DNA of 64,000 bases from Mytilus trossulus (Eukaryota). The stretch covers positions 54,374,001 through 54,438,000 of the forward strand of contig NC_086378.1 of assembly GCF_036588685.1 (NCBI RefSeq), read 5' to 3'. The position numbers were made by a program, and so were the translations under genes. Below the pieces are notes generated by a model. That model did no database searches, was not told where the DNA came from, and worked only from the letters and a program-made list of their open reading frames with translations. Of this stretch, positions 23,421-44,800 are shown piece by piece (position 1 is the stretch's first letter; each line of letters begins with the position of its first letter).

Positions 23421-23496
23421 ATGACGATCTCCCCGGTGATTTTGACCCTTGTCTCCATCCTGATACACTCAACTTTACAGTCCCAAAATGAAGATG
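23421..23496 (+). CDS. Laccase first coding exon: signal peptide [25 protein letters not shown]
   Basis: Pyrimidine tract + tttcAG (23417-18), ATG 2 nt later, hydrophobic core, donor G|GTGAGT at 23497. Its phase 1 matches the acceptor at 32762 (G+AT=Asp). Linkage across the 9.3-kb intron is inferred. Confidence 0.72.
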
Positions 23497-26400: not shown

Positions 26401-29400
26401 AAATGAAAACTAAATCTTTTTATTGCTGTGAAAATTAGAAAGAATATTTACTGCTCTAGTAGCACCATGTACTGCAAGTTGTGATAGATTGATAATTCAA
26501 AATGGTTCAATCATTTTACCTTGGATTTCATTTGATGGACATGTTGATATGGATAGTCTGTTTAAGCATCTTAAAAATCACATGAAGGTATTCGCATATC
26601 AATAAACTGAACTCAGTGCGAAGAACCTTTAAAGTACACTTAGGTAAAGAGCGCACTACGTTTGCGCGCATTTGGGGATTAACATATTTTACGTTTGCGC
26701 ACAGCTTTTGATTACATTTGCGCGCATTCATTTTACAGGTAAACTCAGGTAAAAATATAAATAAGAATTAAATTTAATCATAATTTACTATAATTTCGTT
26801 TATCTTTAAATAAACATGACTATCAATTATTAATTTTGAAAAATCATTAATATACGTATTGATAGAACACTGAAGTATGGGGATATATCTTGTAGATGCA
26901 CTGTTAAGGATTGCAAAGGCAGAATAAAATTTGATGAACATTCAACAGTCATTCTTAATGCCAGATCCGTTGCTCGAAATCCCACTTCCATCTCCCCGTT
27001 GATAAGCAGGGGACTTAGACTAACAGAAGGGGTTCTTATATATACTTAAAAATTGAACGAATTAATAAATAGATAAGTGTTATTGTCTGTATTTTACCTG
27101 AGTTTACCTGAGTTTACCTGTACAAAAAATGCGCGCAAATGTAATCAAAAGCTGCGCGCAATCGTAATGATTTGTGCGCGCAAATGTAATGGTAATGCGC
27201 GCAAACGTAATGCACCGAGACAAAGAGCTCAAGCTAGTGAAACACTTTTTTTATGCTGGTCACTGTCTGTTATCAAACTGCACCGCAATCCTAAAAAAAA
27301 TATGCAAGTTAATTCTAATAGAAGTAGAAGCCAAAGGAAGTAAATAAACCGTTTACTGAAATAAATGTACAATATGTCTATGGGACACAGATGCCCCTGC
27401 TTGTGAAAAAAAGGGACAAGTAAACTCCACATATAGAACATCTGTATAACTTGTATTTCTTTTAATATGCAATGCCAACCTAATTTTTGTTTGTGTTCTT
27501 TTTTCAATTGTTCATGAACATTAATAATGTGTTAACTGTTGATATTTATAGCCTTTTTTCTTCTTTGCTGTGAATACAATTACTCTAATATATTGTAATC
27601 AATTTAACTATTGTAAGTTTATTGTCTTAATTTTGTATGCCATAACCATTTAAGGTAAATGTGTTTGTGCGAATAAAATATTGTCTATTGTATTGTCTAT
27701 AGAAACAGGATTCACGTAATTTTGACTGTTAAGTGACCATACGCATTGTGTATAAGTTTCAAAACATTTGGTTGAGGCAAACTAAAGTTAAAGAACAGAA
27801 ACAACAGATTAAGCATGATCTTTCCTATCTTTAGTCTACGTGTTGATATCTGTATCATTAGTACTAGTATCAACTTCTTATATCTAATAACTCTTGAACA
27901 GTAACACCACCCAATATCGAACTTGATAGAGCTGTGTTATGGGGTAATACGCATTACGTATAAGGTTTATAAAATTTGATTGAGTCAAACTTATTTAAAA
28001 GAACGAAAACGCAAATTCAGCATTTTCTATGTTTTTAAAGGAACATGATAACTCTTGAACGGTAAAAGTGACGCTACCAAATTTCAAATTATTTTTTTTG
28101 TATGTGGAAATAACCATTGTCCCAGGTTAGGGAGATGGTGAAGACCCCGCTAACATGTTCAACCCCGCCCTATTTAGTATGCATGTGCCATCGTTTGAAT
28201 TTCGTTTTATCGTGTTTTTTTCTATGTTGTGATGTTATAATAATGTTTCATCCGGCTGCAAATGTTTGCACCTGTCCTAAGTCAGGAATCTGATGTACTG
28301 TAGTTATCGTTTGTTTGTGAAATTTATACGTTTTTCTCGTTTCTCGTTTTTTTATTTAGATTAGACCGTTGGTTTTCTCCATTGAATTGTTTTACACTAG
28401 TAGTTTTTGGGCCCTTTATAGTTTGTGGTTCGGTGAGAGCCAAGGCTCCGTATGAAGGCCGTACATTGACCTATAATGGTTTACTTTTATAAATTGTTAT
28501 TTGGATATAGAGATTTGTCTCATTGGCACTCATACAACATCTTCTATACCTATTTGCTCATTGTTGAAAGGGCTTATTCTCATTTCGCCTTAGCTGTCAA
28601 AATTTATATATAAAATTAATCCCAGTTTGCCTTAGCACAAATTTCCAGGTACACAAGAATTAACTAAGGCGAAATGAGAGCTTCTGTAAACTATGAAATT
28701 AAGTTATGTTTTGTTTGTATTGCAATTAGTTGATATTTGTTATTTTGATGTCAAATTCTACCAATAAATACTTTTTAAAGGAATGATATATTTTTTTTTC
28801 ATGTTTGGTGTCCCACTTTTTATAGTTGCTCTTTTTTTTTCTTCCTGAGAGTGTTTTTCTTTTACTAAATGTGTTATATTTTGTAAATAAAGAAATAAAG
28901 TCTTATTAGAGATGACAAATTAGATATGAACATTTCATATTTTAATGAATAAATAAAGACAAATATCATACTAGTACAAGGCACTGATATACATAATTGA
29001 AAATTATCACAAACTCAAAAGAAAATTTAAGAACATTGGTTCTGAAGAAAATCGTCAAATTATGAAATCTTTGGGGAAACAATACAAAAAAACTTTAGAT
29101 AAAGCAATTATTGCTCATAGAAAGAAAATGACAAACAAAATAAACACATTGAGATCCATTAACTCAAAAGAGTATTGGAAATTACTTAACAGTAGAAAAA
29201 AGAGAGACCAACCTGTCATCCCTATCAACAAATTATTCGATTTTTTAAAAAATCTGAACGCCGCCCCAGAAATTGAATAAAATAAAAATATTCCAACTCT
29301 AAACCCGACTGATGTCAATAGGCTTAATGAAGATCTAAACAGAAGAATTTCTAAAGACGAAATTCTTAAGGGCATCAAAAACCTGAAAAAATAAAGCATT

Positions 29401-32400
29401 TGGGGATGATCGTATAATAAATGAATATATCAAGTCTACAGCTAGTTTATTCATTGAATTTTACGAAAAATTATTTAACGTTTTATTTCGCACTGGTATT
29501 ATACCTGACAGTTGGCTAGTTAGTTACATAAAGCCTGTTTATACAAAAAAGTACATTGTAGCAAGTTGGACCCCAAAAATTTAGACCAATTACCATTTTG
29601 AATTGTATGGGGAAACTTTTTACCGCAATTTTATGCGAAAGACTACATCTTTCCTCTAAAGAATTCATGATTTTAAACGAAAACCAAATTGAATGTGGTT
29701 TTAGAAAGGGTTATTCGACAACCGATAATTTATTTGTGATATCTAATTAGCACAGTTTTGGAGATTTTTTAATATTTTTTTTTGATATTTTTTTTATTAA
29801 AGTTTCTGTTATGTAATTAAACAAGTCTGTGGAAAAATATGTTTTTTTTTTCCTTTCTATTAAAAAAATAATTAAAGATAACAAATCCCTAGTTACATGT
29901 TGTTCAAATTGCTATAAAAACACCAAGGTTTAATTTGTTTATTTAATATTTTTATCTAAATTCACATTTCGCCTTAGTTCAATTCCCATCTGGCCTTAGT
30001 GTATTTTGTACCTTTTTTACCTGGAATTCGCAGCTAAGGCGAAATGGGAACACACCGTTGAAAGCCGTATGGTGACATATAGTTGTTAATTTCTGTGTTA
30101 CCTGGTCTCTTGTGGAGAGTTCTTCTTTGGCGCTCATGCCACATGAGGTGAAGGGTGGGGATCTTGCTAGCATGTTTAATCCGCCGCATTCTGTTTGTAT
30201 GTACCTGTCCCAAGTCAGAAGACTCTAATTCATGAATTGTCGTTTGTTTATGTGTTACATATTTGTTTTTGTTCATTTTTTGTACATAATTTGTCCGTTT
30301 CTTTTCTCGGTGCTTTTTATAACTGACTATGCGGTACGGACTTTGCTCATTGTCGAAGGCCGTAGGGTGACTTATAGCTTTTAATTTCTGTATCATTTAG
30401 TATTTTGTGGAGTGTTCTTATTGGCACTCATGACACATCTTCTTTTTATTTTGTGTATAAGTTTTGTAGTATTTGGTTGAGGCCACTAAAGTTAAAACTA
30501 CGGAACCCTTTTATTTTGGACGTTCGGGACGAACGGACTAGAGTAACTCCGCAGTTTATGTTCCTTTTCTTTGGTACCAACACAGAAGTTCTGACTAGTG
30601 TGCTGGTGCTAGGCATTCCACCAGCACTGTCATTAACACACATACACACAATTTTATTATAAAAATATGCAATCTTCATTTTGATTTGATTCTTTTTGGC
30701 CTATAATGATTATATGCATGCCTTAATTTCACAAGTAGTATAAAATTTGACAAATTTATTGTGCATATACATTTTTGTTATATTTTATAACTTATTTTTC
30801 AATTAAACTTAAATTGATCATCACTTTCTTTTTATATGTCTTTTAAGATTCCGTTTTGAACAAAACGATTTGTTACATATTATATACTTCAAACGTATTT
30901 CTATCAAATCTGATATTATTACAAAGCAACTATTAAATAAAATGCATTCGAACTTTAAATGTGCATTTAAATATATATGCAAGTCGTCAACTGGTGAAGT
31001 GGTTAGATGCATATATCGTTGGCCAATTGAACGACAGGTCTCCAAATTTTGTTGTTGTAAAACGTCTAGAAATATTAAAGGAAATAAATAAAAACAGAAC
31101 GACTGAATTAAATAAAATAATGTTCGATATAATGAACCATTTCGATTTATTTTTAAAATCTAAACGATGCTTTATTTTTATCTAGTTTCTTAATCATGAG
31201 AATGAGAAAATAAATACCTTACAGCTTCTTTAACCGTCGATCCTGAAATGTTTAATGTTATAAAACAATTTTAGCGTCTTTGACCTACTTTGCCTTTTTA
31301 TTCGGATACTTGTTGTTATCTTCTTCAAGTTCAACGGGAACATTAGAATAATCTAGAAAAGAACCCAGATGGAACCATGAATTCGGGTTGCTATAACCAA
31401 ACAACCCGGATGTTGAACCAGTTACCATGGTTTCGAACCAAAGAACCATGGTTCAGAACCAAACAACTCAGATGGAACCAGGGTTTAGAACCAGAGTGCC
31501 CGGATAGAACCTTATTGCATTCGGAATTCTCATGACTTTTTATTCCTTCAACGTATTTTCCAAATCATTTATTTATTTAGTATATTTATATATAATTATC
31601 GCGTCTTATTGTGCATTTTGCTGATGTCAGGGTGGAAGAAAATTCCTTAAACTATCAAATATCTGTTTTTTTATGGCTAGTTTAAAGAGAAATCTGACGT
31701 TTTACTTACAAATGCACATACTTGATCAGCCATGGCAAGTGCCATGTTCTTTATATGCGTTTCTTTACTTTGTAGTTTTATCGTTGTTTTTATTGGCTTG
31801 AAATTTGTTTAAATGTTTAAGAGGTATGTAAGTTTGGTTGGGTTTTTTCGGTTGCTGTTTGACATTGATTTACTTTATTAAATTCATTTACGACTCGAAT
31901 TTGCTTCAAAGTTGTTTGCAAGTTCAAATCAATTTGTTTCATTTAACAAAAAACCAAAAGATTACTTGTCTAATTTTATTGACGAGTTAAGACGTTTGAG
32001 TCAGGCGAATCAGGCTCCTGGATGGCTCTAGATTTTTTGGTAATGGTGCTCATGATTTTAAATGTCCCTTGGTGTACCTATTTTTATTTATCAAGAAGTT
32101 TTATATGTTTATACACAATACCAGTTTACATACAGCTTTATTAATAGCCAGTATAGAAAACAACATGAAACATATAAGCTCGTTCGTGATAATTTGAAAA
32201 CATTGCAACATATACACCATGTATTTGTCATATACAATGTTTATTCCAAATATTTCAATAGGTTAATGTGGGATAATTTTTTTGTTCAATTTTAATTCTA
32301 ATCATCTAGTAAGTACCAATAGAAGCAACAGTTCGAGATGTTGAGTTGTTAATTGTTCATATCTTTGTTGTACAGAGTACCCACCAAAATATGTAAACAT

Positions 32401-35400
32401 ACAATATCACATAGAAATCTTTTAATAGTTTATGATCTGGCAACATAAAACATGAAACCTTCATTCATCAGGTTGTTGACACAAATTACAGCATTTTCGT
32501 ATAGGATATTAAACAACAAAGCAAAAAAATGTTGATTTGCAACATAATGAAATGACAATAACTAAAGCAGTGTTTCTTTAAACTCAATGTGGTCATCCCG
32601 GATATCTTTTAAAAGATGCTCTTATGTTTACAGTCCCACTGACCTTAAACCAGTAGAATTTGTTGTTCCAGTAATGTTCCAACTGTACTGCTATAAGCTC
32701 ATAATTTAATGACTAACAAAAACATGTTGCCGCGTTTTGATTTCTTTCTTTTGTATTATAGATTATCATACCCATCCATGTAACAGAGAATGTTTAGACG
32801 ATTCCGAACCAAAAGAATGTAAATATGATTTTACCATAGAGTATTACTACACCCTCACTCAGGCTTGTTATGATTGTCCATATAATATCACTGATTGTTT
32901 ACGTCCACATTGTGTGTCTGCAGATGGTGTGTCACGTGCAATTATGACCGTAAACAGGAAGTTGCCTGGACCATCCATACATGTAAGTCGAATAATTATT
33001 TGGTGTTCAAACAAGTTGGCACAACATGTGTTTGTCGAAAAAGTGTTAATTACATTTTTTGTATATATTAGAGCTAAATGTGTTTACAGGACACCAAATT
33101 TTAAAACAACCAGAGTGAAAACAAAGGAATCAAGTACACTACCTCAATACTAAACCAACGTTACAATTTGTATCGGAATACATTTAATCTATTCTAAAAG
33201 AGGGGGGCAATACCTTTTTATGTTAACCTGTTTTGGCCTTTTTCAAGGTTATCTGAGATAAATTAAAGCTGTTAACTGTTGTTAACCAACTTTGTTAACT
33301 GTTATCAGCATTTTTGCATATTTGTTAACTGTTTTTGCCAAATTCGAGGTGTTGTAAACATGTTAACGGACCCCCTATTGCCCCTCCTCCTAAAGCAGTT
33401 GCTATTGACGTGTAAATGTGTACCCTCATCAGAGAAATCAGCATTATAATTAATTACGCCAACATGTATTAAAATCATCATCAGCACCCTAGTCAAAACA
33501 AATGAAAGACCGAACAAATACCAATACATTTAAAGACCATTTCAGTGTAAACTCAACATACCAACACGTTCCTTAAAAAGGCTACAAGGAAATGTTTATC
33601 CTCACTGAACCAGTTCCATGTATTTTACTTAAATGAGGAAGACTTAAGTACAAGTATGTAACCTGACTTCAGGTTTCTTATTTCTTTTAAAGGTGTGTAA
33701 AGGGGACACAGTAGTAGTAAATGTGAAGAATATGTTAGAAGGAGGCGAAGGTGTGTCACTCCATTGGCATGGTGTTCTTCAAGAAGGTACCCCACATATG
33801 GATGGCGTCACTATGATAACACAATGCCCTATTCATACTCATACCACATTTCAATATAGGTAATTATAGAAATATGCTGCTCTTATGCTCAACAACTATT
33901 TCAAAATGATTATTTTTTTTTCAATCTTGTAAATTCCACAAAGAAATTAGCATCCGAATCTATTACATATTGTTTTATGATATTGTCAGAAAATCAAACG
34001 TTCGAACCATAATGACAAAATGGCAACCTCTTCAACCACAAGATGTATTTATGATCATGTTAAATTATTTTTTTGTCATATTTTAGATAGGAACAACTAC
34101 TTATGTGGATGTAAGATAATAACAATCTGTTTTCATTATGAGCAAGAGTACAACTGTCAAAGTACAACCGCACTATACATATAGTTACCTACAGCGTTGA
34201 CATATATTTGATACTTATGAAATTGTATGGGTAAATCGTCTTTGTTTGAACATTGTAACTTATTTAAAACTTTAAATAAAATAATACAGTTTAACAACTT
34301 TCAAGATCAATATAACTCATACTTGTGCTTCATATAAATTGCAATAAAGATTTGAACCAAGGTATTCTGTAGATCACATGTTCAATTATTTAAAAAAATA
34401 AATTAGCAAAACAATATACAAATTTCTGAATTCAGATTTAAAGCAAACGATCCCGGAACACATTTCTGGCATGCCCATTCCGGACAGCAGAGAACAGACG
34501 GTATGTTTGGATCTTTTGTCATCAGACGACCAAGGTCACATGATGCAAGCTCAATGTTCTACGATGAAGATCTCCCTGAACACACTATTATGTTAAACGA
34601 TTGGTTGGATCAGATGGGAGCAGAAGCTTTTGCTGCGGGACATCATGCTATGAAAGACCATTTTCCTAGTTCAATTCTCATTAATGGTAAATTATACTTT
34701 AAACTTATTACTCCATTAATGTGATATAACCGGATGTGACGTAACTACACATCGTTGGCTCATATTTACTAAAGGTTCAAAAAAGGGTGTAACAAATAAA
34801 ATGATCTTACTTAAAATAACCTTGTACAGAAAACCACGAGCTTGGATTGAAGTTTATCTTTTTTTCATTAATAAACAGAAAAAGAAACCGTCAAAAATAA
34901 GAAAAAAATATCAAGATGCGTGTCTTGGTGAGCTTTCTACAGGTTCTAATAAATATGTTGCACACTAGATATTTCTATAATAAATGACGGCATACTACAC
35001 TAAATAAATGATAATACAATATTTTGATGTTTTACACAGGACGAGGAACAGTCAAAGAATTTAATGAAATCACAGACCACAGTTCTCACGGTTCCCACCA
35101 TAAAGATACAACTTTACCAGAAGATATGATTATGGACACTTTGACAACTACTCGTACAATGGAAATGACGCACGCTGATCATATGTTTGACCACATGATG
35201 CACAAAAGAAGTTCAGAACATGCAGAAATGCAATCAGTTCATAATATGCATAATATGGATACTGGCGCTCACAGTATGTCTGATCTAGATGCACGTCATA
35301 CGCCGCATGCACTTTTCAAAGTTAAACAAGGAAAGAGATATCGATTCCGAATAATTAGTAATGGCATCGCCAACTGTCCCATACAGTTCTCTATCGATCA

Positions 35401-38400
35401 TCATAGTTTAACTATAATATCAACAGACGGATCACCATTCAATCCCATCTTAGTTGAATCATTCACTATTTTTGCAGGCGAAAGATACGATTTTGTTCTG
35501 ACTGCTAATCAGCATAAGCGAAACTACTGGATTAGAGCACGAGGATTAGCCGAGTGTGGACCTGAATACAAATCTGTAAGTCAGACGGCTTTCCTTTCAT
35601 ACGAAGATGCTGCTATTGTGTTACCCCCAGAATCTCCTGATTATCAAAGTGGAAATAGACAAGGACTGGTATGTAATCAAGCAAATATGAGTTTTCAATA
35701 AATCACCTAAAAACATTACAGGGAATTTGCATACTTGTACTGTATATCACTTCACTATAATAATTTTATATTTAAGTACTTTGTTACTGCAAAAATACAA
35801 CAGATCAAAACATACTACTGATTTTCTGATTTTTTTGAAAGAAATAAATAGCTATGGAAAACGAAAAACTATAGAACGACTGGTTAATTAAAGTTGAATT
35901 CAATATGAATATCAGAGGGTTTTTTTTATCAAAAGTTTCAATGAAAGTTATTTTTATAAATATAACTATACGAGCAAAGCAAGTCCTGGTTACCTCAAGC
36001 TTCTAAAAGTTAATTATATCTACTTCTAACTTGATTTGTTTTAAGCATGACATATATTAAACAGAGATTGTGGCCTAGTGGTATTAGGAAACGATATCGA
36101 AAAAACATATGTGTTTCTAAAAAAAATTTGAAAACTTATGTTTTATACCATAAAATTAAACGTCTAAATTTAAAAACATTTTGAAAAAAAAAGGTTGCTA
36201 AATAGAACAATCAAAACTGTTTTCAATTGGATGAACTGATATTGAATTTCATAAAACACAACCGCCAAGTAACGTCTATTATTTGTTCTTGTAGATGCTT
36301 AATCCTTTAAATATCGGGCCATCAAGAGGATTTATCACTGTAGATCAACTGGATTCTTTAGTTCCAGATGATGACGTGTTAAAACCAGTACCAGATAAGA
36401 AATTTTACATAGCAATGGATTTTAATATGGTAGAAAACCCATATTTTCAGAACAGCAAATACTATTCACTAAATACTATGATGAACCGACATGGACATGG
36501 GAAACACAGCATGCATATGTTGTCACCACAACTTAATCATATATCGTTTATGGTGCCTCCATCACCCCCACTTTCTCAACATTCGAAGACTATTGATGTA
36601 AGTTTCGAAAAACTCTTTTATTCAACTTACTATCGATGTTTTGTATATTTGTTAAGTTTAAGGTTGGCAGATAACATTGTTGACAGTAATCTGCACACAT
36701 ATTGCTGAACCTTATACTCAGCTTCTTTTGTTAAAATATTAAGCTTCTCAATGAGGGATTTTTTTATTTATTTTGTGAAAGGGTCAAAGTAAATATTTTG
36801 TCAAAATTTTATTAAAGTTTAACAAGCAAAATTAAGTTTAGTCAATGTGTTTGTTAGCACCTTAAAGTTTAGTTCTAGATACCTTTTAAACTCATTTTTT
36901 TTCACTTTTCGTATTTGAAGGAGCTCCACGTTTCTTCATAAGTAAAAACAAAGACCTTTAATACGAGAACAGTCATATAATTGATAGTTTAAAGAAATTG
37001 CATTTGATGGATACGTTTTATCATATGTAGCTTTCAAAGAGTTACATAAATGAAATAGCCTATATTTGTGATGAAAACAAGTGCTTTGTAGCTTATATTA
37101 ATAAAAACTGATTCAGACTGAGTGTTAATTTATTTCTTGATTGAAATCTACCTTTTATATCGTTAGTATCTATAACCGTTTTATAAATATATTGATCTCA
37201 TTGGTATATTAAGTAACACTCAATTATATGGTCATATTATAAATTTCTGTTTATAAAACTTTGAATTTTTTGAAAAACTAAGGATTTTCTTACCCCAGGA
37301 GTAGATTACCTTATCCGTATTTGGCACAACTTTTTGTAATTTTGGGTCCTCAATGCTCTTCAACTTTGTATTTGTTTGGCTTTTTAACTTTTTTGGATCT
37401 GAGCGTCACTGATGAGTCTTATGTAGACGAAACGCGCATCTGGCGTATAAAATTATAATCCTGGTAATTTTGATAACTATACTAAAGTTACTAGAATTCA
37501 CAATATGTTTTTTAGATTTATTTTCATACGACATCTGATAATTAACATATATTTACAGGACTTTTTTTGCAATGAAGAAACTATGAGTGATAAGGATTGC
37601 ACCACAGAATTCTGTCAATGTACTCATCGTATCAAAGTACAGCTTGGAGAAGTTATTGAACTTGTATTAGTGGATGAAGGGAAATCACAGAATAATAACC
37701 ATCCAATGCATTTGCATGGCCATAGTTTCAGAGTAGTAGCGATGGAAAAGGTAAGAGTATCTAATAATCCTATTTGAATGTAACAGGATACACAGGAATG
37801 GTTTCTTCTTTTTATATGTCAAGACAGTCCCCATTCGCCCTACTTTAAAATACTTACATAAATCTTGAACATTGAAAGGTCAATGATGTAGAGTTTTCAT
37901 TAAAGTAAATTCACACTCAGCGAAACTATCGCATGTCGAGACAACAACAGTTTACCTATGTTCATTTAAAGATAAAGAATACATGTTAAGTTACAAACAA
38001 AATCGAGAGAATCAATTAAACCCCACCAGGAAAACGATCGGGCAAGGTCATTTAGGTAAGCGTTACTTGTTATACCACACATCAATACGGAATAAGACGC
38101 ACTAGGTAGACTTACAGGTCAGACGAATATTCTTTCAACAATACCAGGACCCAAGATTCGTATTATTATTATTTAGGAAGGCATTATAAGAAATGAGAAT
38201 GAACTTGAGAAGAATGCAGCTGAGCATAAGATTTCTTGTAAATAGCTTCAACATATTTCAACAGATCATCTTCTGTTTGTAATTTATGTATTGATATAGA
38301 TTATTTCTAGAGAACATGATACTTTAGTATCCTTCGATTTACATATCTTTTATTTCTATAAAATTATTCTGCTAGTTTTTTTTGTTTAAACTGAGAATCT

Positions 38401-41400
38401 CTTTAATTTTTTTTTTGCCTGAGCTGTATTCGACAAATTTTTTGAAGTTAAGGTCATCAGTGCTTTTTAACTTCGTATCTTTATGTGGCCTATTTTTCTT
38501 TTTTTATTTGAGGGACAATGTTGGAACTTTTGTAGATGAAATTCGTATCTAGCTTAAGCCTTGTATCTATAATGCGTTTATGGCTAACTATCTATCTTAT
38601 TGCTATTACAATGCATGTTAATTGTCATAAATGATTAACCCATTGGACTCATTGATTATTTTACGTTAAAAAAACTTTATTTTTAATGAAATATGGCTAT
38701 GTTGTACATGTTGGTATCCCTTTACTATAACCTCAAATGTTATAGGGCAATCAAGACAAAGCTTGTACAAAAAAAAAAAGAAAATAGACACTTGGTTTGG
38801 TACAAGACATATCCTTAACCATAAAACAAAATCTCTAGTCATTTACTGTGTAATAAATTACAGAAGTATGTCTGTAATGATCGCGTAACAATGATTTGCA
38901 TCAAATAAAGAATAATATCACATCGTTATTAGATATACAAATCAGCTTACACGACAAAAAGTCAAAACTACAAAACTTTAATTGCATATCTTTACAGTAA
39001 ATTTGTTTTTCATAATAGATAACTCTATATGATTATATTTAAGATTTATCACATACGATATTATAATATGACCTTCCAATATTAGAATTTGAAATAAAAA
39101 CTTGAAGAAATTTCTTATTTAAGCATAGTCTGATATTGCGTTTTTTTCACGACAAAATCACAACATTCTTTGGTATATATGTTAAGAGAATATATCAAGA
39201 AACTGATATAGGTTTCATTATGCCTTTATTTAATATGAAAACTATCTAATATTTACTAGTTGCTTCTTTGAAAATAATTTAATGATCAAGGGGACACAAT
39301 CCAAAATACTGTTTGTAACACTGTGAACTAATTACTTATATTTTGAAGAGAAATCAAACTTTTAAAAATCTACTATTTCAAGAGTCCAAAATAGTTTACT
39401 TTTCTATTCAACACAAATTAAGATAGTTTGTGGGTAATAAAACAATTCTGTGTATTTTCCTTAAGACTTTAACTATATTATATATATTGAGAGTCTGTTT
39501 ATTTAGTATAATATACTTAACTCGTACCTTCCAAAATTACCATAATGTTTTGACTGTTTCATGGAGTCTTATTGTGCTGTGATGCCCATAAATAAAATTG
39601 ACACTTTTTACATGAATCTAAATGAACCGGTTTATACATCTAAGTAAACTCCGAAACCATGTTTTTTTAAATAATGTATTCATTCATTACGGGTAGTTTT
39701 AGAAAGTAGGATATACATCATGACAGTACAGATGCATTAACTACTGACCTGATGATCGATATCATCGCAGACCCTAAAGTTTCATTTAACTTGCTTCCTA
39801 AACACTTGATATCGAGACAACCCATTGACAGATAATCTTAAACCTAATTCGTGGTAAATTCTAAATTGAAATCGCATTTCTACCACATTTGACATAAATA
39901 ATGTTCATTTATTACTTGTTTGGCTTTATAACGATTTTGATCTGAGAGCGTCACTGATGTCTTCTGTGGACAAAACGCCCGGCTTGCGTATTAGATTATA
40001 ATCCTGGTACCTTTGATAACTATAACTAAAATACAACAAATAATATCATGGGTGTGATTTTACTTAACTGAAATATCATGTTTTGTAGTAGGTAATGAAG
40101 GAAGTAGTTGCAGTTTGGTATTTAAAACAGCAGCATGGTATTTAAAAAGGTGCCATAAAGTAATTCATTAAAAGCAAAATTAATTTATTTCGAGTGTTGC
40201 AAGCTAGCAAGGTATATTGTTCAAAATGTAGTTAATGTTTCTTCGATAATGCATGGAGCCTTCTGTAAAAAACATTCGATGCCTTCAAAATGATAAAAAA
40301 AGGGAATGTGATCGATTTTAAAAATTCTCAGGAAGTCTTATTCACTGCTTCAGTTAACTTTTTTCAAACAGCTGTTCGGAAGAGTGTCGTTTACATAGAA
40401 GACGTGTTTAAGCAAGCCAACCGATGCATATACATTTTCTGAAACAATTAAAAAAAAAAAAAAATATTTACAACTCTCTTAATTGATTTTTTTTTCATTT
40501 CATAGCTAAATACATCAACGACAGTCGAGTTTGTTAAGGTATTGGATGCAATGGGACAAATCAAACGGAAGTTAACGAGAGCAGTGTTGAAGGATACAGT
40601 CACTGTTCCTGATGGGGGATACACAATCATACGATTCAAGGCAACTAATCCAGGTTAAAGTCATTTCAATTTTCTTATTACCACGCTTGACAGAAGCGTG
40701 GAAATACATTTGATTTTATATAGCACATAAGATCTGATTAAGGATCTCAATAGTTTTGTGTTTGGAAGGTATGAACATCGCTTCATGATAACTTTAATTT
40801 TGATTGGTTAATTTTGCATGGATAAAACCATTCAAACAACAACTCAACAGCAAATTGCAAAAGATAACTAGAGATGCTCTATTGACGGCAAACAACAGGA
40901 CACAAACAAGATGTTAAAACGACAAGACTGAAAGTACTAAAGGGTAAAAATAAACTGACACCGTCATGGCTATAAAAGTAAATCAACAAACAGACAAACA
41001 ATAGTGAACAAAAAACAAAAGAGACAAATAAGATCTGATTAAGGATCTCAATAGTTTTGTGTTTGGAAGGTATGAACATCGCTTCATGATAACTTTAATT
41101 TTGATTGGTTAATTTTGCATGGATAAAACCATTCAAACAACAACTCAACAGCAAATTGCAAAAGATAACTAGAGATGCTCTATTGACGGCAAACAACAGG
41201 ACACAAACAAGATGTTAAAACGACAAGACTGAAAGTACTAAAGGGTAAAAATAAACTGACACCGTCATGGCTATAAAAGTAAATCAACAAACAGACAAAC
41301 AATAGTGAACAAAAAACAAAAGAGACAAATAAAGATAGAACAATTCGAACTCATCCAAAAACGTAAGAAATTTGCTACGATGTGGCGGTTTTGGACTAGT

Positions 41401-41894
41401 GTTTGATTACATTACCTTACCTCAGTTTTTTCACATAGACCAAAGAAATACGAACAAATAAAAAGTGTTCAGAAAATGACTTTCACATCGATATTCATGA
41501 TGTTCGTTTATCTGATATCAATCTAATCTGATATTATTCAAAATAGCTATGTACTGACAATGAAATATGTTAAAAGGTCTTAGACTATCATTATAATTCA
41601 ATTTCATTGGTTTCAGGTTTTTGGTTGTTTCACTGTCATATAGCTTTTCACATGGCAATGGGTATGACGTTAGTCATTCAAGTTGGCGAAACACACCAAA
41701 TGCCAAAACCTCCAAAACGTTTTCCAAAATGTGGCGATTGGACTCCAGAATCATTGGACGATGAAGTCACTGAAGAATTTAAATCATGTCCACAATTACC
41801 AACGTCTGTAGCGACATCTACAACAACTGTTGCCACGACAACGAAAGCACTTACAACAGTAATTGTCTTGCTAGTTCGCTGCCTGCTTAGCTAG
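23421..41894 (+). CDS. Multicopper oxidase / laccase-like gene (3 cupredoxin domains), 9 coding exons, ~754 aa: join(23421..23496,32762..32982,33693..33859,34436..34686,35040..35668,36295..36597,37559..37750,40506..40653,41617..41894)
   Basis: Manual splice reconstruction: all introns GT..AG, phases match (1,0,2,1,0,0,0,1), total 2265 nt is divisible by 3. The four canonical Cu motifs occur in order: [27 protein letters not shown]. Confidence 0.93.
26651..27217 (+). mobile_element. Non-autonomous Mutator-like (MULE) derivative with ~110-130-bp TIRs and a FLYWCH-like transposase remnant
   Basis: Inverted arms rich in GCGCGCA and AGGTAAACTC; imperfect 9-bp TSD aggtaaaga/agacaaaga; internal frame [27 protein letters not shown]. 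Confidence 0.65.
28571..30056. mobile_element. Non-autonomous DNA transposon with ~26-bp imperfect TIRs (…CATTTCGCCTTAGCTG) and perfect 8-bp TSD GTTGAAAG
   Basis: TSD at 28563-70 and 30057-64; subterminal GCCTTAG motifs; splits an interspersed repeat that resumes after 30064. Confidence 0.75.
28995..29742 (+). mobile_element. Decayed non-LTR retrotransposon (LINE) ORF2 fragment, region leading into the RT domain
   Basis: Frameshifted translation: KEYWKLLN...[29 protein letters not shown]...[15 protein letters not shown]...IKPVY...[17 protein letters not shown]...[18 protein letters not shown]. Confidence 0.88.
31360..31512. repeat. Degenerate GAACC-rich tandem repeat
   Basis: Recurrent gaacca / aacccagatggaacc units. 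Confidence 0.6.
32762..32982 (+). CDS. Laccase exon 2: Cys-rich N-terminal region (HPCNREC...CYDCP...CVSADG) and start of domain 1 ([11 protein letters not shown])
   Basis: Acceptor tatAG 32760-61, donor GTAAGT 32983. The C-x-R-x-C Cys-rich motif is typical of invertebrate laccases. Confidence 0.92.
33693..33859 (+). CDS. Laccase exon 3: [13 protein letters not shown]...[26 protein letters not shown] (L1 Cu motif); not in the ORF track
   Basis: Translated by hand. Acceptor aaAG 33691-92, donor GTAATT 33860; HWHG and MDG motifs present. Confidence 0.95.
34436..34686 (+). CDS. Laccase exon 4: [25 protein letters not shown] (L2 motif)...SILING
   Basis: Acceptor ttcAG 34434-35, donor GTAAAT 34687; GTHFWHAH motif. 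Confidence 0.95.
35040..35668 (+). CDS. Laccase exon 5: domain 2 ([12 protein letters not shown]...DG...GERYDFVL...NYWIRA) preceded by a His/Met-rich insert
   Basis: Acceptor cacAG 35038-39, donor GTATGT 35669; lies within ORF 35024..35701. Confidence 0.95.
36295..36597 (+). CDS. Laccase exon 6 (domain 2/3 linker and start of domain 3; second His/Met patch)
   Basis: Acceptor gtAG 36293-94, donor GTAAGT 36598, 101 codons; QLNHISF..PPSPPL motif. Confidence 0.92.
37245..37480 (+). repeat. Interspersed repeat family B (GAGCGTCACTGATGAGTCTT..GTAGACGAAACGCGC); copies at ~6530-6680, 38430-38540, 39910-40025, 46555-46630, 48660-48850(-)
   Basis: Shared core motif in several locations. Confidence 0.8.
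37559..37750 (+). CDS. Laccase exon 7 (C..C..CQCTH; [11 protein letters not shown]3 motif)
   Basis: Acceptor tacAG 37557-58, donor GTAAGA 37751. Confidence 0.95.
40506..40653 (+). CDS. Laccase exon 8 (LNTSTT...[22 protein letters not shown]); not in the ORF track on this strand
   Basis: Translated by hand. Acceptor catAG 40504-05, donor GTTAAA 40654; KDTV..P.GGY...RF.A.NPG motif. Confidence 0.93.
40727..41331. repeat. Apparently exact 301-bp tandem duplication in the last laccase intron
   Basis: ataagatctgattaaggatctc...gagacaa starts at 40727 and again at 41028. Confidence 0.93.
41617..41894 (+). CDS. Laccase last coding exon ([18 protein letters not shown]4 motif with Met axial ligand; Thr-rich then hydrophobic tail; TAG)
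   Basis: Acceptor ttcAG 41615-16; stop at 41892-94. Confidence 0.95.
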
Positions 41895-44800
41895 CGCTTT
41901 TTAAACACTAACTTACTAAAGAACTGTCCATTGAAATCCTAATGCTACTAAAATCCATGTCTGTGCAATGTGTCTTTAAAAGAGTATTTTTGATTAATTT
42001 ACTTATACATGATTATAGTTTATGTCTGTTTGAATGTGAAATCCTTTATATGTTTATACTAAATCTATGTTTATACATTAACATGCTTATTAAAATGTCT
42101 TGTTGCTATATGTGTGTGATGTCTTTGTCTAAGTCTTTAGAAAACATTTCATATAAATCATATCGATCACTCTAAATATCATTTATGTTACAAAAGTATT
42201 TCATGTTGCCCCTTGATTAATATACGTATATCGGGAACCTTAAAGAAAAACAAGCAAAGCTGTCAAACATACGTACTCTGTTATAACCTTTTACCACAGA
42301 AGATCTTAAGTACTTTTATTGTTGGTGTTTTTCGAACAAGATGCACTATAATGAGTTAATCCTTTCCTTTCGGGGATATTAATCCTATACTTTAAGGGTG
42401 TTAACATGTTGCATTCAAGGCAAATAACTATTTGTAATTCAATCAAACATGTAACAAATATTTTATCAGAGGAGAATAATGTTATAGAAGTAGGCGACAT
42501 CTGAAGTCATTACGAATGATAAGAGAATATTAACACAACTACTTTGCATCAACACCACGAAGAAAACCGAACATTACACAATTTGAATTAGTAAAAATAA
42601 CGGGAATGGCAGCAGTAATCTAACGAATTAATATTAGGAACCTCATGGAATTCTTCCCCATAAACAGCAACAAATTAAAAGTGATAATGATATTGATAAC
42701 CCATTCTATTGAATATCATGAAACTGATTTAATTCTTACAATTCTTTTGAATTTAAAACAGTTACAAGCAATACATGGTACAAGAATATGAATTTACGGT
42801 TGAGTATGCGTAATTCTTTCTAGAAAACAAAATAAATAGAAGGAGCTTATTTTGGGCTATACTATATTTATATTTTCTATATCAAAACTTTTGATATCAA
42901 GGTTGCATTCATACATTATACATAATCAGTTTAATCTATGTGTCTTTAACTAACGTCAGTGCATATGATAAAATCATTTAACAAAAACGATACATCTTTA
43001 TTAACTAATATTGCTGTAAGGCATCCCTTTATATATCTCTATAATTAGTCGTATGAATAACATTGAAATGTATATGGTAATGACTGATAGACATTAGAAT
43101 ATTTGAACATTAAGGTATTAAAATTCGGAATATATGTGCATACATGTATATGCGAACAATATAATAAATATACATTCATGTTTAATCCATTGAATTAATA
43201 TCTAGGTTTGGGAATAGCATACTGCTAGTACTAAGTTTTTAAGATGTTTCACTACAAAACTATATATACCTGGTATCTATGATAAGTCCGGAGGAGCGAC
43301 ATAGCTTTTGCATTAATTTTATCTGCCGTATACTGCATTTTTTAAATGGATGATGGACCATGTTCATGTTGGCTATCTAACGAGTACCAGATATTAATAT
43401 CTCACTTGAAATTTGCTAAATGTTATTCAAAATGTATCTTAATATCTTAATGTATATTAGATAGACCAGATACACACATTACATATAAGTTGTATGGCTT
43501 CTCTGTTCGTTTCTTCTAACTGTTACTTGACTGTATTGAGTATCGATATTCTTGTTTAACAGCATAATTTCAATGGCGCAACTAACATTTATGTACATGA
43601 ATTGAATGATATATATTGTGTCGTGCTGTTTGTCTTGTTCTTATCTAAATAGCTGTTAAAAAGATAATATATAATATTTCCCCCTTGCAAACTGAATACA
43701 ATGAATAGATAAAAGTTCAAATTCACGTTAATATTGAATTGCACGTGTTCATTCTTAAACTAGTATTATAATCATTTCTATGAATTATTGGATGTACGTT
43801 TATCCGGAAAAGAGGTTAAGTATCAAGGACTATATGTTTTAAAGTATTTTTTTATTTTTCCTTTACTGTTTTGTTTCTTATAGTACTCCGTTTTTATTTC
43901 TTTCATATAGTTCTCTTTTATTTCATCAAGTACTTTTTTTTGTTTATTTCTTACTGTATACTATATGTCTCATTCTATTCTGCTTTTTCTATATTTCTAA
44001 GTTTTTCTTTACCTTCTTTACAGCTACCATCGGATAATCAACAATACTTGGGTGGTCTTTCACAGACACGTGACGTTGAAGGCAGCTCCGTTACACTTCA
44101 TTATGTTCTTCTTTTATGGATGACTGGTAAAAAATCGAACAACACAACTCCAACTTTAAATACGCCAAAACCCAATCGTTTAAACAATTATGGCCATTTC
44201 CCAATTCAAGTCAGCAATGGCGCCAAAAAGTTTCTTCCAAAACCTGCATATAATATACATGCTTTACGTAATATTCCTGACATTCCAATTCATCTCGCTG
44301 GACGTGCTCGGACTACTCTTCAGGAACTATTACAATATGCTAAACCACTTGACATGCGCAAACCTTTAAGAACGAGAGGAAGATCGTTAAAACGATTGAG
44401 ACATAAGACAATTCTTGGAAAAAAGTTATCAAATATTTTGAAGAAGCAACAGCTAAGAAGACTACATAGGTGATTTTAACATCACAAATACGATACACTG
44501 TTGAAATCCACCAATTCCTTGGTCTCCGCTTTCATCCCAGATATTAAACATGGGTGATTTTTTTACAGCGAAAAAAGATCTTTACACATTGGATATTTGT
44601 GTAGTTAGTTTTACTGACAATAGCCAGATATGGTTGTTAACGCTGGTTCACTTCGTGCTTTAGCATTGTTTATAGCTGGGAAACAGTCAATGATATTGAT
44701 TAACTGAAACGCAGACACATACCACACTTTTGGGTGTGAAGAACGAGTATTACCTGTACTCCTTGGAATAATAGATACATTTTGTCGAACCTGTTTGCAT

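What the first reader, a model, noticed from the sequence alone, without database searches (positions are those of the whole stretch)
35078..35308. 77-residue His/Met-rich insert in an animal laccase: a possible CueO-like cuprous oxidase or metal-sponge module
Seen: directly after the conserved ING-RG of domain 2 sits [10 protein letters not shown]...[40 protein letters not shown]...HTPH, with 14 His and 11 Met in 77 aa, in frame in an otherwise intact exon. Known: typical insect and fungal laccases have only a short loop here, whereas Met/His-rich inserts characterise bacterial copper-detoxifying MCOs (E. coli CueO, periplasmic CopA/PcoA), where they bind Cu(I). Inference: this invertebrate enzyme may have convergently acquired a Cu(I)/soft-metal capture arm, or use His-metal coordination to dock into a sclerotised matrix such as byssus or periostracum.
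Basis: partly seen in the sequence, partly recalled or inferred. Interest (0 to 1): 0.8.

Follow-up and report, generated by a model that had tools for sequence, protein, structure and literature searches.

The report
His/Met-rich loop in mussel copper oxidase
A mussel multicopper oxidase gene carries an expressed, disordered stretch rich in histidine and methionine that all major bivalve groups share, which suggests a metal-catching arm like those of bacterial copper-detoxifying oxidases, although nobody has tested this.

Summary
Window 35078-35308 encodes 77 in-frame residues with 14 His and 11 Met, inside exon 35040-35668 of an intact multi-exon multicopper oxidase (MCO). Five window exon pieces match Mytilus trossulus LOC134721540 exactly.

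- **Expression:** spliced transcript contigs from 4 of 4 runs keep the segment, with no joint or gap inside the exon.
- **Lineage:** paralogues, the nearest solved structure (termite laccase 8r7i) and E. coli CueO have a short loop here. Thirteen bivalve orthologues form one clade (SH-aLRT 99). All carry a 94-233 aa loop here with 20-28% His+Met, against about 9% elsewhere.
- **Linked changes:** the clade also has Met at +1 and +3 after the second T1 His (12 of 13 against 0 of 35). It has a His-rich patch in the loop that appears to correspond to CueO's Met-rich domain.
- **Structure:** AlphaFold gives pLDDT below 50 for the insert.

Best reading (0.45): a flexible Cu-recruiting arm on a surface-anchored metallo-oxidase. 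It is analogous to CueO's domain but sits in a different loop. The byssus-docking idea is weak. I found no paper describing it.

The parts
35078..35308 (+). His/Met-rich insert: 77 codons, 14 His and 11 Met, predicted disordered
   Evidence: Translation and residue counts. Kept in transcript contigs of 4 of 4 runs. pLDDT below 50 for the matching residues 250-321 of P0212. No Pfam family.
35204..35209 (+). Lys-Arg pair (HKR|SS) inside the insert. In my reading of the printed sequences it sits at the place where oyster, pearl-oyster and scallop orthologues have R-x-[KR]-R.
   Evidence: Read from the sequence. Motif table: (8 of 14 long-insert proteins have R-x-[KR]-R). The positional match comes from reading by eye, not from a computed alignment.
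35240..35261 (+). 9-bp tandem unit CATAATATG, 2.4 copies, encoding HNMHNM. This is a trace of growth by replication slippage.
   Evidence: Tandem Repeats Finder.
35040..35668 (+). Exon 5. The insert is followed by the cupredoxin domain 2 core.
   Evidence: Splice joints. Pfam PF00394 matches exon residues 79-189 only, E 1.5e-28.
34436..34686 (+). Exon 4: end of domain 1 (HFWHAHSG copper motif), the loop HHAMKDHFP, and the ILING strand before the insert
   Evidence: Clade-specific loop HHAM(T/K)(E/D)H.P against HHH..GDNKP.
36295..36597 (+). Exon 6: linker to domain 3 and the start of domain 3
   Evidence: Joints. tblastn of P0212.
36478..36519 (+). Second His/Met patch ([13 protein letters not shown]) just before the SPQLNHISF strand. 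This loop appears to correspond to the one holding CueO's Met-rich domain.
Evidence: Conserved in the clade, His median 4 against 1. Global hhalign against CueO, low column confidence. Modelled as two short helices.
23421..23495 (+). Exon 1: signal-peptide-like N-terminus
   Evidence: tblastn of P0212 residues 1-25, 100% identity.
32762..32982 (+). Exon 2: Cys-rich N-terminal module and the start of domain 1
   Evidence: Joints. Invariant Cys columns.
33693..33859 (+). Exon 3: domain 1 with the HWHG copper motif
   Evidence: Pfam PF07732. Joints.
37559..37754 (+). Exon 7: domain 3 with the HPMHLHGH copper motif
   Evidence: Pfam PF07731. Joints.
40506..40655 (+). Exon 8 (approximate ends): domain 3
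   Evidence: tblastn of P0212 residues 614-663, 100% identity. Ends not checked with reads.
41617..41894 (+). Exon 9: T1 site [12 protein letters not shown] (41631-41666) with Met at +1 and +3 after the second T1 His, a Ser/Thr-rich stalk, and the hydrophobic tail [11 protein letters not shown] with its stop. An internal GT at 41859 is the donor for the long isoform.
   Evidence: The 755-aa isoform X3 of M. trossulus ends with this tail. Met signature 12 of 13 against 0 of 35.
44024..44473 (+). Alternative last exon (approximate start): a long basic C-terminal tail used in the 892-aa isoforms
   Evidence: tblastn. P0312 and P0212 sequences. A similar tail occurs in the oyster isoforms.

Best explanation
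The segment is a disordered internal loop in the first loop of cupredoxin domain 2 of a secreted three-domain multicopper oxidase (M. trossulus LOC134721540). One annotated isoform of this enzyme is tethered by a C-terminal hydrophobic tail. The gene belongs to a paralogue found across bivalves.

Three linked features define this paralogue:
- this long His/Met-rich loop;
- a His-rich patch in the loop that appears to correspond to CueO's Met-rich domain;
- two extra Met residues directly after the second T1 histidine.

The most likely function is a flexible, low-affinity, multi-site metal-recruiting arm. Its thioethers and imidazoles would bind Cu(I)/Cu(II) transiently, and possibly other soft or borderline ions. 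This would raise the local metal concentration and pass ions to a substrate site at the T1 copper. The enzyme would then act mainly as a metallo-oxidase (cuprous, perhaps also ferrous) in extracellular copper handling, not as a phenol-oxidising laccase. This works like CueO's Met-rich domain and the Met/His-rich tail of lactic-acid-bacterial laccases, but was acquired independently in a different loop.

Shown here: presence, expression, conserved composition, the linked changes near T1, and predicted disorder.
Inferred: metal binding, hand-off to T1, and substrate preference.
For: 1. **Composition:** 14 His + 11 Met in 77 aa, P about 5e-9 against the rest of the protein.
2. **Expression:** retained in spliced transcript contigs of 4 of 4 runs from two species labels, with no gaps.
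3. **Conserved composition:** 13 bivalve orthologues from Protobranchia, Palaeoheterodonta/Heterodonta and Pteriomorphia form one clade (SH-aLRT 99). All have a 94-233 aa loop here with 20-28% His+Met, against about 9% elsewhere. A 14th long-insert protein, P0227, has 19%. Six short-loop relatives have 24-25 aa.
4. **Sequence drifts, composition stays:** insert identity falls to 31-47% with many gaps between orders.
5. **Within Mytilus:** all 11 Met are unchanged in M. californianus and M. coruscus. The 3 insert variants listed in the transcript contigs are all synonymous.
6. **Linked changes:** Met at T1-His +1 and +3 in 12 of 13 clade members against 0 of 35 other MCO1-like proteins. Patch-2 His median is 4 against 1. 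The loop before ILING is remodelled to HHAM(T/K)(E/D)H.P.
7. **Loop correspondence:** CueO's Met-rich stretch (13 Met, 7 His in 53 aa) falls opposite the patch-2 loop in a global profile alignment.
8. **Disorder:** AlphaFold gives the core pLDDT above 90 and the insert below 50 with no secondary structure.
9. **Spacing:** HxM/MxH spacing exceeds shuffles (at most 5% of shuffles reach it) in 7 of 14 inserts.
10. **Published analogues:** CueO's Met-rich domain acts as a transient copper-binding domain that helps recruit Cu+ (PMC11494321, abstract read). Lactic-acid-bacterial laccases combine two Met at the T1 entrance with a flexible Met/His-rich C-terminus and have cuprous oxidase activity (PMC12723717, abstract read).
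Against: - No biochemical, metal-binding or tissue-expression data exist for this protein or any orthologue that I could find.
- The insert is not in CueO's loop.
- I could not measure the distance from its anchor points to T1, because model coordinates are not exposed.
- In Mytilus itself the HxM/MxH spacing is not significantly above shuffles (6 against 3.5, fraction 0.11). It is also not enriched in the four scallop proteins.
- The insert evolves faster than the core: 9.5-10.8% against 4.2-4.4% differences within Mytilus, and 69-79% against 88-94% identity in three close genus pairs.
- M. californianus and M. coruscus have lost 3 of the 14 His, two by H to N changes and one in a 3-aa deletion.
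- His:Met ratios differ widely between groups. Scallops and unionids are His-dominant and oysters are Met-dominant. One common ligand chemistry is therefore not assured.
- In the published lactic-acid-bacterial laccase the Met/His tail had only a minor effect on activity. [quoted passage not shown]
- Low pLDDT is not proof of disorder.
Confidence: 0.45

Rival explanations
1. The insert is a processing linker or pro-region. It is a disordered loop that holds a proprotein-convertase site. Cleavage in the secretory pathway turns the single chain into a two-chain enzyme and may activate it. The His/Met content would be secondary. This reading does not exclude the metal-arm reading.
For: R-x-[KR]-R lies near the C-terminal end of the insert in 8 of 14 long-insert proteins: Pinctada RMRR, two oysters RRRR, four scallops RS[RK]R, and P0227 RSKR. 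It also occurs in both dipteran homologues with an unrelated T/P/E-rich insert in the same loop (RTKR, RKRR). By eye, the flanking motif M(D/E)xL(P/T)T...(D/M)(M/L)E(M/N) lines up between Mytilus, Pinctada and oysters, which places the Mytilus HKR|SS at the same site.
Against: Mytilus has only K-R without the P4 Arg. Tegillarca and Mactra have no such motif. Solemya and the unionids have only a dibasic pair elsewhere in the loop. This reading does not explain why 19-28% His+Met is kept in all 14 long-insert proteins, nor the Met gains at T1. There is no protein-level evidence of cleavage.
Confidence: 0.2
2. The insert is a His-rich buffer, store or sensor for another metal (Zn(II), Ni(II), Cd(II)). 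Alternatively it is a copper reservoir that loads the enzyme's own four copper sites, or a pH- or metal-dependent autoinhibitory lid. In none of these does it deliver substrate.
For: Scallop and unionid inserts are His-dominant (26-29 His against 8-12 Met) with many Asp/Glu. That suits borderline ions better than Cu(I). The loop is long and predicted flexible.
Against: Met is kept throughout: 11 of 11 within Mytilus and 22-36 Met in the Pinctada and oyster inserts. Two Met are gained next to the T1 His. Both point to Cu(I)/Ag(I)-type chemistry at the catalytic site.
Confidence: 0.15
3. The insert is a tolerated low-complexity expansion in a permissive surface loop. It grows and shrinks by slippage and has no specific function.
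For: Length varies from 94 to 233 aa. A 9-bp tandem duplication encodes HNMHNM. The insert evolves faster than the core and has a 3-aa indel within Mytilus. The same loop took up an unrelated insert in Diptera.
Against: The same unusual two-residue bias is kept in 13 of 13 members of a clade that spans all major bivalve groups. Genus-level identity is 69-79%. All Met are conserved within Mytilus. The insert co-varies with His/Met gains at two other sites near T1. The dipteran insert shows that this loop does not acquire His/Met by default.
Confidence: 0.12
4. The insert is a docking module. His-metal coordination anchors the oxidase in byssus, periostracum or shell matrix, where it cross-links catechol-rich proteins.
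For: From recall, not tested here: His-rich, metal-coordinating domains are known in mussel byssal proteins. The enzyme is secreted (signal-peptide-like exon 1).
Against: Orthologues with the insert occur in cemented oysters, freshwater unionids, Mactra and Solemya. One isoform carries a hydrophobic C-terminal anchor-like tail, which does not suit a matrix-embedded protein. Six paper searches found no report of such a laccase in byssus or shell proteomes. Supplementary proteome tables could not be read.
Confidence: 0.05

Closest known systems
E. coli CueO (cuprous oxidase) Met-rich domain
   Same: Both are three-domain MCOs with a flexible Met/His-rich segment. In CueO, 53 residues between the LSMD and INGQAF strands hold 13 Met and 7 His. 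The published role of that domain is transient copper binding that helps recruit Cu+ (PMC11494321, abstract). The mussel protein's second patch appears to lie in the same loop.
   Different: CueO has no insert at the site of the finding (TNGA|IYPQH). The mussel insert is richer in His, Asp, Ser and Thr and is up to 233 aa long in orthologues. The protein is eukaryotic and secreted, and belongs to a different MCO clade. Equivalents of CueO's substrate-copper ligands were not tested.
Laccases of lactic acid bacteria (Pediococcus Pp4816)
   Same: The published combination is two Met at the T1 entrance plus a flexible Met/His-rich extension, with cuprous oxidase activity and Cu(II)/Ag(I) capture (PMC12723717, abstract). 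The bivalve clade pairs two clade-specific Met next to the T1 His (12 of 13) with Met/His-rich flexible segments.
   Different: There the extension is a C-terminal tail, whereas here it is an internal loop of domain 2. I did not test whether the bivalve Met residues lie at the T1 entrance. The proteins are not closely related.
MCO1-type multicopper oxidases of arthropods and lophotrochozoans
   Same: They share the domain order, the N-terminal Cys-rich module and the C-terminal hydrophobic tail, and reach 39-56% identity. Hit-list names include 'Mco1p [Mactra antiquata]' and 'Mco1 [Drosophila virilis]'. Two dipteran homologues also have a long insert in exactly this loop.
   Different: The sister paralogue in bivalves and most other members have a 24-25 aa loop. 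The dipteran insert is T/P/E-rich with 4-7% His+Met. None of the 35 others has the two Met after the T1 His. From recall only: insect MCO1 has been reported as a ferroxidase or an ascorbate oxidase.
Termite blue laccase BP76 (PDB 8r7i), the nearest solved structure
   Same: Best sequence match (E 8e-136) and best fold match (Foldseek E 4.8e-68, TM 0.86 on the target). It has the same three-domain core and Cys-rich N-terminus.
   Different: It has 12 residues where the mussel orthologue has 83 (query 242 to 326 against chain 235 to 248). It has no His/Met-rich loops.
Ctr1 copper-transporter ectodomain (recalled, not tested here)
   Same: From recall, this is an extracellular, disordered, His- and Met-rich segment that captures Cu before hand-off. 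Motifs such as MDHS.. in the Mactra, unionid and Lingula inserts resemble it.
   Different: It is an unrelated protein in a different setting, a transporter N-terminus and not an oxidase loop. I ran no sequence comparison, and the atlas search with the insert gave no usable hit.

Membership tests
Three-domain multicopper oxidase (laccase-like; Pfam PF07732 / PF00394 / PF07731) | Three cupredoxin domains in the order Cu-oxidase_3, Cu-oxidase, Cu-oxidase_2 | tested here: met
   Exon-by-exon Pfam hits: PF07732 (3.7e-17, 4.7e-06), PF00394 (1.5e-28), PF07731 (1.6e-12, 8.9e-06). The fold of orthologue P0212 matches laccase and ascorbate oxidase structures.
Three-domain multicopper oxidase (laccase-like; Pfam PF07732 / PF00394 / PF07731) | Complete copper ligand set: HWHG, WHAH, HPMHLHG, and HCH...H....M (T1 Cys, two His, axial Met) | tested here: met
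   Read in the window's exons. Invariant or nearly invariant columns H123, H125, H167, H169, H597, H600, H602, H668, C669, H670 and H674 in the 50-sequence alignment.
Three-domain multicopper oxidase (laccase-like; Pfam PF07732 / PF00394 / PF07731) | Oxidase activity coupled to O2 reduction | not testable with these tools
   Needs an enzyme assay.
MCO1-type clade of arthropods and lophotrochozoans | N-terminal Cys-rich module before domain 1 (HPC.R.C...C.Y...C..CP.N..DC.RP.C) | tested here: met
   Invariant C32, C36, C45, C61, C64, C71 and C76 in alignment A1. Present in window exon 2.
MCO1-type clade of arthropods and lophotrochozoans | C-terminal hydrophobic (membrane or GPI-type) tail | tested here: met
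   The window reads ...[19 protein letters not shown], identical to the end of M. trossulus isoform X3. Most relatives end in a hydrophobic stretch. Actual anchoring was not tested, and a long-tail isoform also exists.
MCO1-type clade of arthropods and lophotrochozoans | Groups with named Mco1 proteins in a tree | tested here: inconclusive
   In the quick ML tree the bivalve insert clade nests among mollusc MCO1-like proteins. These include the clade holding 'Mco1p [Mactra antiquata]'. The arthropod group (Manduca Lac1, An. gambiae) lies outside. Deep forks are open, and rooting rests on one long-branched tunicate row.
CueO-type cuprous oxidase | Met-rich insert in domain 3, directly before the ING.AF strand and next to T1 | tested here: not met
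   For the insert of the finding, CueO aligns across this site with no insert. The separate patch 2 (window 36478-36519) falls opposite CueO's Met-rich stretch in a global hhalign, but per-column confidence is low. That part is inconclusive.
CueO-type cuprous oxidase | [quoted passage not shown] | not tested
   The domain 3 alignment was too uncertain to map single residues.
CueO-type cuprous oxidase | Cu(I) oxidase activity and a role in copper tolerance | not testable with these tools
   Needs assays and genetics.
Lactic-acid-bacterial laccase type (Pp4816) | Two Met at the entrance of the T1 copper centre | tested here: inconclusive
   Met at +1 and +3 after the second T1 His in 12 of 13 clade members against 0 of 35 others. 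Whether their side chains line the entrance could not be checked without coordinates.
Lactic-acid-bacterial laccase type (Pp4816) | Flexible Met/His-rich extension | tested here: met
   The His/Met-rich segment has pLDDT below 50. Here it is an internal loop, not a C-terminal tail.
Fet3p / ceruloplasmin-type ferroxidase | Acidic residues equivalent to Fet3p E185, D283 and D409 facing T1 (role taken from PMC9880977 passages) | not tested
   No Fet3p sequence was available from a tool for alignment. The clade-specific Glu/Asp in HHAM(T/K)(E/D)H.P is a candidate for the E185 position only by my recall of the fungal laccase and Fet3p alignment.
His-rich byssal or matrix proteins | Distribution limited to byssus-forming species, with a soluble matrix-bound product | tested here: not met
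   Insert-bearing orthologues occur in oysters, unionids, Mactra and Solemya. One isoform has a hydrophobic anchor-like tail. Caveat: many bivalves make a larval byssus, and no proteome data were examined.

The most novel reading that the evidence does not exclude
Bivalves have a dedicated, cell-surface animal cuprous oxidase. Three independent His/Met gains rebuild, by convergence, the design of bacterial copper-detoxifying oxidases such as CueO and the lactic-acid-bacterial laccases. The gains are the long domain 2 loop, the patch in the CueO-equivalent loop, and two Met beside the T1 histidine. This enzyme would contribute to the high copper tolerance and accumulation of mussels and oysters. 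A convertase cut inside the loop might tune it.
Probability: 0.3. Interest if true: 0.8.

Novelty: new variant of a known kind. Interest (0 to 1): 0.6.

Why it matters
Met-rich capture domains on multicopper oxidases are an established theme in bacterial copper detoxification. In eight searches of the open literature I found no description of an animal counterpart.

This is an old, bivalve-wide enzyme clade. It keeps a His/Met-rich flexible loop and has gained Met and His around its T1 copper. If it is a metal-recruiting cuprous or ferrous oxidase, three things follow:
- It would be a clear case of convergent design between bacteria and animals.
- It would supply a concrete gene for copper handling in animals widely used as metal biomonitors and known as metal accumulators.
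- It would offer a natural series of capture loops, from 94 to 233 aa and from His-dominant to Met-dominant, for studying how disordered ligand-rich segments feed a redox site.

It also corrects the annotation. These genes are currently labelled 'uncharacterized' or 'laccase-like'.

Tried and rejected
- **Spliced out or exitron:** rejected for the main transcript. No joint lies inside 35040-35668 in 4 of 4 runs. Contigs drop rare variants, so a minor isoform cannot be excluded.
- **Annotation or frame artefact:** rejected. Five framed exon pieces of the window occur exactly in RefSeq M. trossulus proteins.
- **Shared by paralogues:** rejected. The 13 other loci in the genome align only from exon residue 75 onward. 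Ten printed paralogues have short loops. L002, L003 and L014 did not pass my print filter and were not examined further.
- **Known domain:** Pfam at E up to 10 gave only a chance-level PET122 hit for the insert and nothing for exon 6. The ESM Atlas gave no usable hit.
- **Long DNA repeat:** only two short arrays were found, 9 bp x 2.4 copies and 8 bp x 2.2 copies.
- **Same position as CueO's insert:** rejected.
- **Intermediate mytilid orthologues:** a word-based search on residues 225-345 found only the Mytilus cluster and Pinctada. Five Mytilus species from the cluster were compared instead.
- **Distance from the insert to T1:** not measurable. Structure prediction returns no coordinates and /data holds none.
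- **Mapping to Fet3p E185 and fungal pocket residues:** only recalled. The paper passages read give the residues' role but not their alignment to this protein.
- **Earlier notes:** one note on the second patch. A word search gave nothing.
- **Literature:** searches found no paper on His/Met-rich animal MCOs. One search was run to map Fet3p residues and showed none either.
- **Failed comparison:** the window-versus-P0212 residue comparison failed silently and was redone.


Full report
**What is in the sequence.** Read in the frame of the exon that holds it, window 35078-35308 (+) gives 77 residues with no stop. They include 14 His, 11 Met, 10 Thr, 8 Ser and 8 Asp, no Cys and a single aromatic residue. 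Acidic residues outnumber basic ones, 12 to 5. The rest of the near-identical orthologue P0212 has 5.2% His and 3.7% Met. Against that background the chance of 25 or more His+Met in 77 residues is about 5e-9. This is also the richest 77-residue window in the whole protein (25, against a mean of 8.6). The stretch starts 12 codons after the splice acceptor (...ILING | [17 protein letters not shown]...) and ends at HTPH, just before the conserved strand [14 protein letters not shown].

**The gene.** Exon pieces of the window match Pfam Cu-oxidase_3, Cu-oxidase and Cu-oxidase_2, in that order. All copper-ligand motifs are present: [16 protein letters not shown] and [12 protein letters not shown]. 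Mapping P0212 on the window by tblastn gives ten exon blocks from 23421 to 44470. Five framed exon pieces of the window occur exactly in the RefSeq proteins of Mytilus trossulus LOC134721540, P0312 and P0319. The window is therefore from that species or an identical haplotype, and the gene is annotated only as 'uncharacterized protein'. The window was searched exon by exon, and full-length analyses used database proteins.

**Expression.** The run search found 19 holders, four of them with 82-89% of the exon's words. All were labelled 'RNA?' as a guess. I laid contigs of four runs (X1, X2, X4 of organism A and X5 of organism B) on window 32700-37800.
- The contigs skip every intron at GT..AG borders, so they come from spliced RNA.
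- The joints 34686/35040 (4 of 4 runs), 35668/36295 (3 of 4) and three others confirm the exon borders.
- The exon with the insert is covered without gaps in all four runs: fully in X1 and X2, to 35577 in X4, and to 35625 in X5.
- No joint is listed inside it.

The condition 'spliced out in RNA-seq' is therefore not met for the main transcript. Contigs cannot show rare isoforms, tissue or expression level.

**Is the loop normally short?** In the same genome, 13 other loci match the exon, and all alignments begin at exon residue 75 or later, after the His/Met part. Most of the printed paralogues are single open frames of 670-730 aa. They have about 25 residues between ING.G and the YRFR strand (L002, L003 and L014 were not printed by my filter). 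The nearest solved structure, termite laccase BP76 (8r7i, E 8e-136), has 12 residues where P0212 has 83. CueO has none (TNGA|IYPQH). Six other MCO1-like proteins have 24-25 residues. Two dipteran homologues are exceptions, with 112-123 residues here that are T/P/E-rich and only 4-7% His+Met.

**Orthologues.** An exhaustive HMMER search with the exon found proteins whose alignment runs through the insert. Word-based searches with full-length hits then gave named orthologues in four scallops, ark shell, two oysters, pearl oyster, Solemya, Mactra and two unionids, plus one unnamed 839-aa protein.
- All 14 have a loop of 94-233 aa at this site with 19-28% His+Met, against about 9% in the rest of each protein. 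Mytilus has the shortest loop (22 proteins processed before the script stopped).
- In a 50-row quick ML tree the 13 bivalve proteins form one clade with SH-aLRT 99. Solemya, Mactra with the unionids, and Pteriomorphia all fall inside it.
- That clade is separate from the short-loop bivalve paralogue that includes 'Mco1p [Mactra antiquata]'.
- The 839-aa protein groups with brachiopod sequences.
- A Lingula protein has the short loop here but a roughly 190-residue His/Met-rich expansion at the second patch.

The trait is therefore old and bivalve-wide. It is not a single species' acquisition, and similar expansions recur in lophotrochozoan MCOs.

**How it evolves.**

| Comparison | Insert | Core |
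|---|---|---|
| Ostrea-Saccostrea, identity | 79% | 91-93% |
| Two scallops, identity | 73% | 88-94% |
| Two unionids, identity | 69% | 89-93% |
| Between orders, identity | 31-47%, many gaps | 49-74% |
| M. trossulus vs galloprovincialis or edulis, differences | 1 of 77 | 2.1-2.4% |
| M. trossulus vs californianus or coruscus, differences | 9.5-10.8%, plus a 3-aa deletion | 4.2-4.4% |

All 11 Met are unchanged within Mytilus, while 3 of the 14 His are lost in M. californianus and M. coruscus. The three insert variants listed in the transcript contigs are synonymous; 33 further variants were not shown by the tool. A 9-bp unit repeated 2.4 times encodes HNMHNM, which suggests slippage as the growth mechanism. 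Overall, the sequence is under relaxed constraint while the composition is retained.

**Linked changes elsewhere in the protein.** The clade has three further signatures:
- Met at +1 and +3 after the second T1 histidine (HCH..FHM.MGM) in 12 of 13 members, against 0 of 35 other MCO1-like proteins.
- A His-rich patch before the PQ(I/L)N strand of domain 3, with His median 4 against 1. This is window 36478-36519, also noted earlier as s1-830429.
- A remodelled loop before ILING: HHAM(T/K)(E/D)H.P in place of HHH..GDNKP.

I fetched E. coli cueO for comparison. Profile alignment shows no CueO insert at the site of the finding. A global alignment of domain 3 puts CueO's Met-rich stretch (53 residues, 13 Met, 7 His) opposite the patch-2 loop. 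Its anchors are on the flanking strand and the HP.H.HG motif, but per-column confidence is low.

**Structure.** AlphaFold2 on P0212 with the 50-row alignment gives pLDDT above 90 for most of the core and below 50 for residues 250-321, with no secondary structure there. Patch 2 is modelled as two short helices at intermediate confidence. The long C-terminal tail is also low-confidence. Foldseek confirms the laccase and ascorbate-oxidase fold. Coordinates are not exposed, so I could not measure the distance to T1. By inference, a 77-233-residue flexible loop on an enzyme of this size could reach any face, so reach does not discriminate between readings.

**Dibasic motif.** R-x-[KR]-R lies near the C-terminal end of the insert in 8 of 14 long-insert proteins and in both dipteran inserts. 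Mytilus has only HKR|SS at what I read by eye as the same place. Tegillarca and Mactra have none. Convertase cleavage is therefore a serious non-exclusive rival reading, but it is weakest in the window's own species.

**Interpretation.** The unusual His+Met bias is conserved across the clade. It is absent from the unrelated dipteran insert in the same loop. It comes together with Met and His gains next to the T1 ligands and in the CueO-equivalent loop. Taken together, these make a metal-related role the best reading. I judge a flexible Cu-recruiting arm on a secreted, possibly membrane-tethered metallo-oxidase as most likely (0.45).

Two published analogues support the concept, and I read the abstracts of both. 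[quoted passage not shown] Lactic-acid-bacterial laccases pair two Met at the T1 entrance with a flexible Met/His-rich tail that has only a minor effect on activity (PMC12723717).

Rivals:
- processing linker (0.2);
- a store or sensor for another metal, or a copper reservoir for self-loading (0.15);
- tolerated low-complexity expansion (0.12);
- matrix docking (0.05).

The byssus idea fits poorly with orthologues in oysters, unionids, Mactra and Solemya, and with the hydrophobic tail isoform.

**Literature.** Eight full-text searches returned nothing on His/Met-rich inserts in bivalve or other animal MCOs. One search was aimed at mapping Fet3p residues. I saw search listings and abstract starts only, plus passages of PMC9880977 on Fet3p residues. 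Subscription papers and supplementary tables were not visible. The following statements are recalled and untested: insect MCO1 activities, the Ctr1 ectodomain, fungal laccase pocket residues, and the position of Fet3p E185 relative to the ING strand.

**Verdict.** The feature is real, expressed and ancient. It is a new variant of a known kind: an MCO with a ligand-rich capture segment. Its metal-handling role is plausible but untested. Interest 0.6.

Noticed in passing
window 36478-36519: A second His/Met patch ([13 protein letters not shown]) sits before the SPQLNHISF strand. It is conserved in the insert clade (His median 4 against 1). It is expanded to about 190 residues in a Lingula protein. 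It falls opposite CueO's Met-rich stretch in a low-confidence global alignment.
   Followed up: yes
window 41859 (internal GT donor), 41859-41894 and 44024-44473: There are two alternative C-termini. Read-through gives a short hydrophobic tail ([11 protein letters not shown]), as in the 755-aa RefSeq isoform. Splicing to a distal exon gives a roughly 150-aa basic tail, as in the 892-aa isoforms. Oyster and scallop models show the same pair of endings, so the choice looks conserved. Not checked with reads.
   Followed up: partly
window 41652-41660 (T1 loop): Met at +1 and +3 after the second T1 histidine is a sharp clade marker: 12 of 13 against 0 of 35. The two unionids also replace the axial Met by Leu.
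   Followed up: partly
window 36633-36974 and 37146-37487 (intron 6); also 33213-33383 (intron 2): These intronic stretches are covered by very many contigs at 90-95% likeness, with summed depths in the hundreds to tens of thousands in all four runs. They look like high-copy transcribed repeats or transposon fragments.
   Followed up: no
window 29062-29750 (intron 1): Short open frames, for example one containing ...[12 protein letters not shown]..., look by recall like fragments of a non-LTR retrotransposon reverse transcriptase. Observed only.
   Followed up: no
L005-L012 (G000 contigs C3, C1, C13, C8, C14): The mussel genome holds at least eight MCO paralogues that are single uninterrupted open frames of 670-730 aa, some in tandem pairs. 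The gene in the window, by contrast, has ten exon blocks.
   Followed up: no
proteins P0284 (Anopheles gambiae) and P0172 (Drosophila-like): These dipteran homologues have an unrelated T/P/E-rich insert of 112-123 aa in exactly the same loop. It ends in a furin-type motif (RTKR, RKRR). The loop therefore looks like a recurrent insertion site, and long inserts there tend to carry a convertase site.
   Followed up: partly
window 35240-35261: A 9-bp tandem unit CATAATATG, 2.4 copies, encodes HNMHNM. This is a visible slippage event inside the insert.
   Followed up: yes
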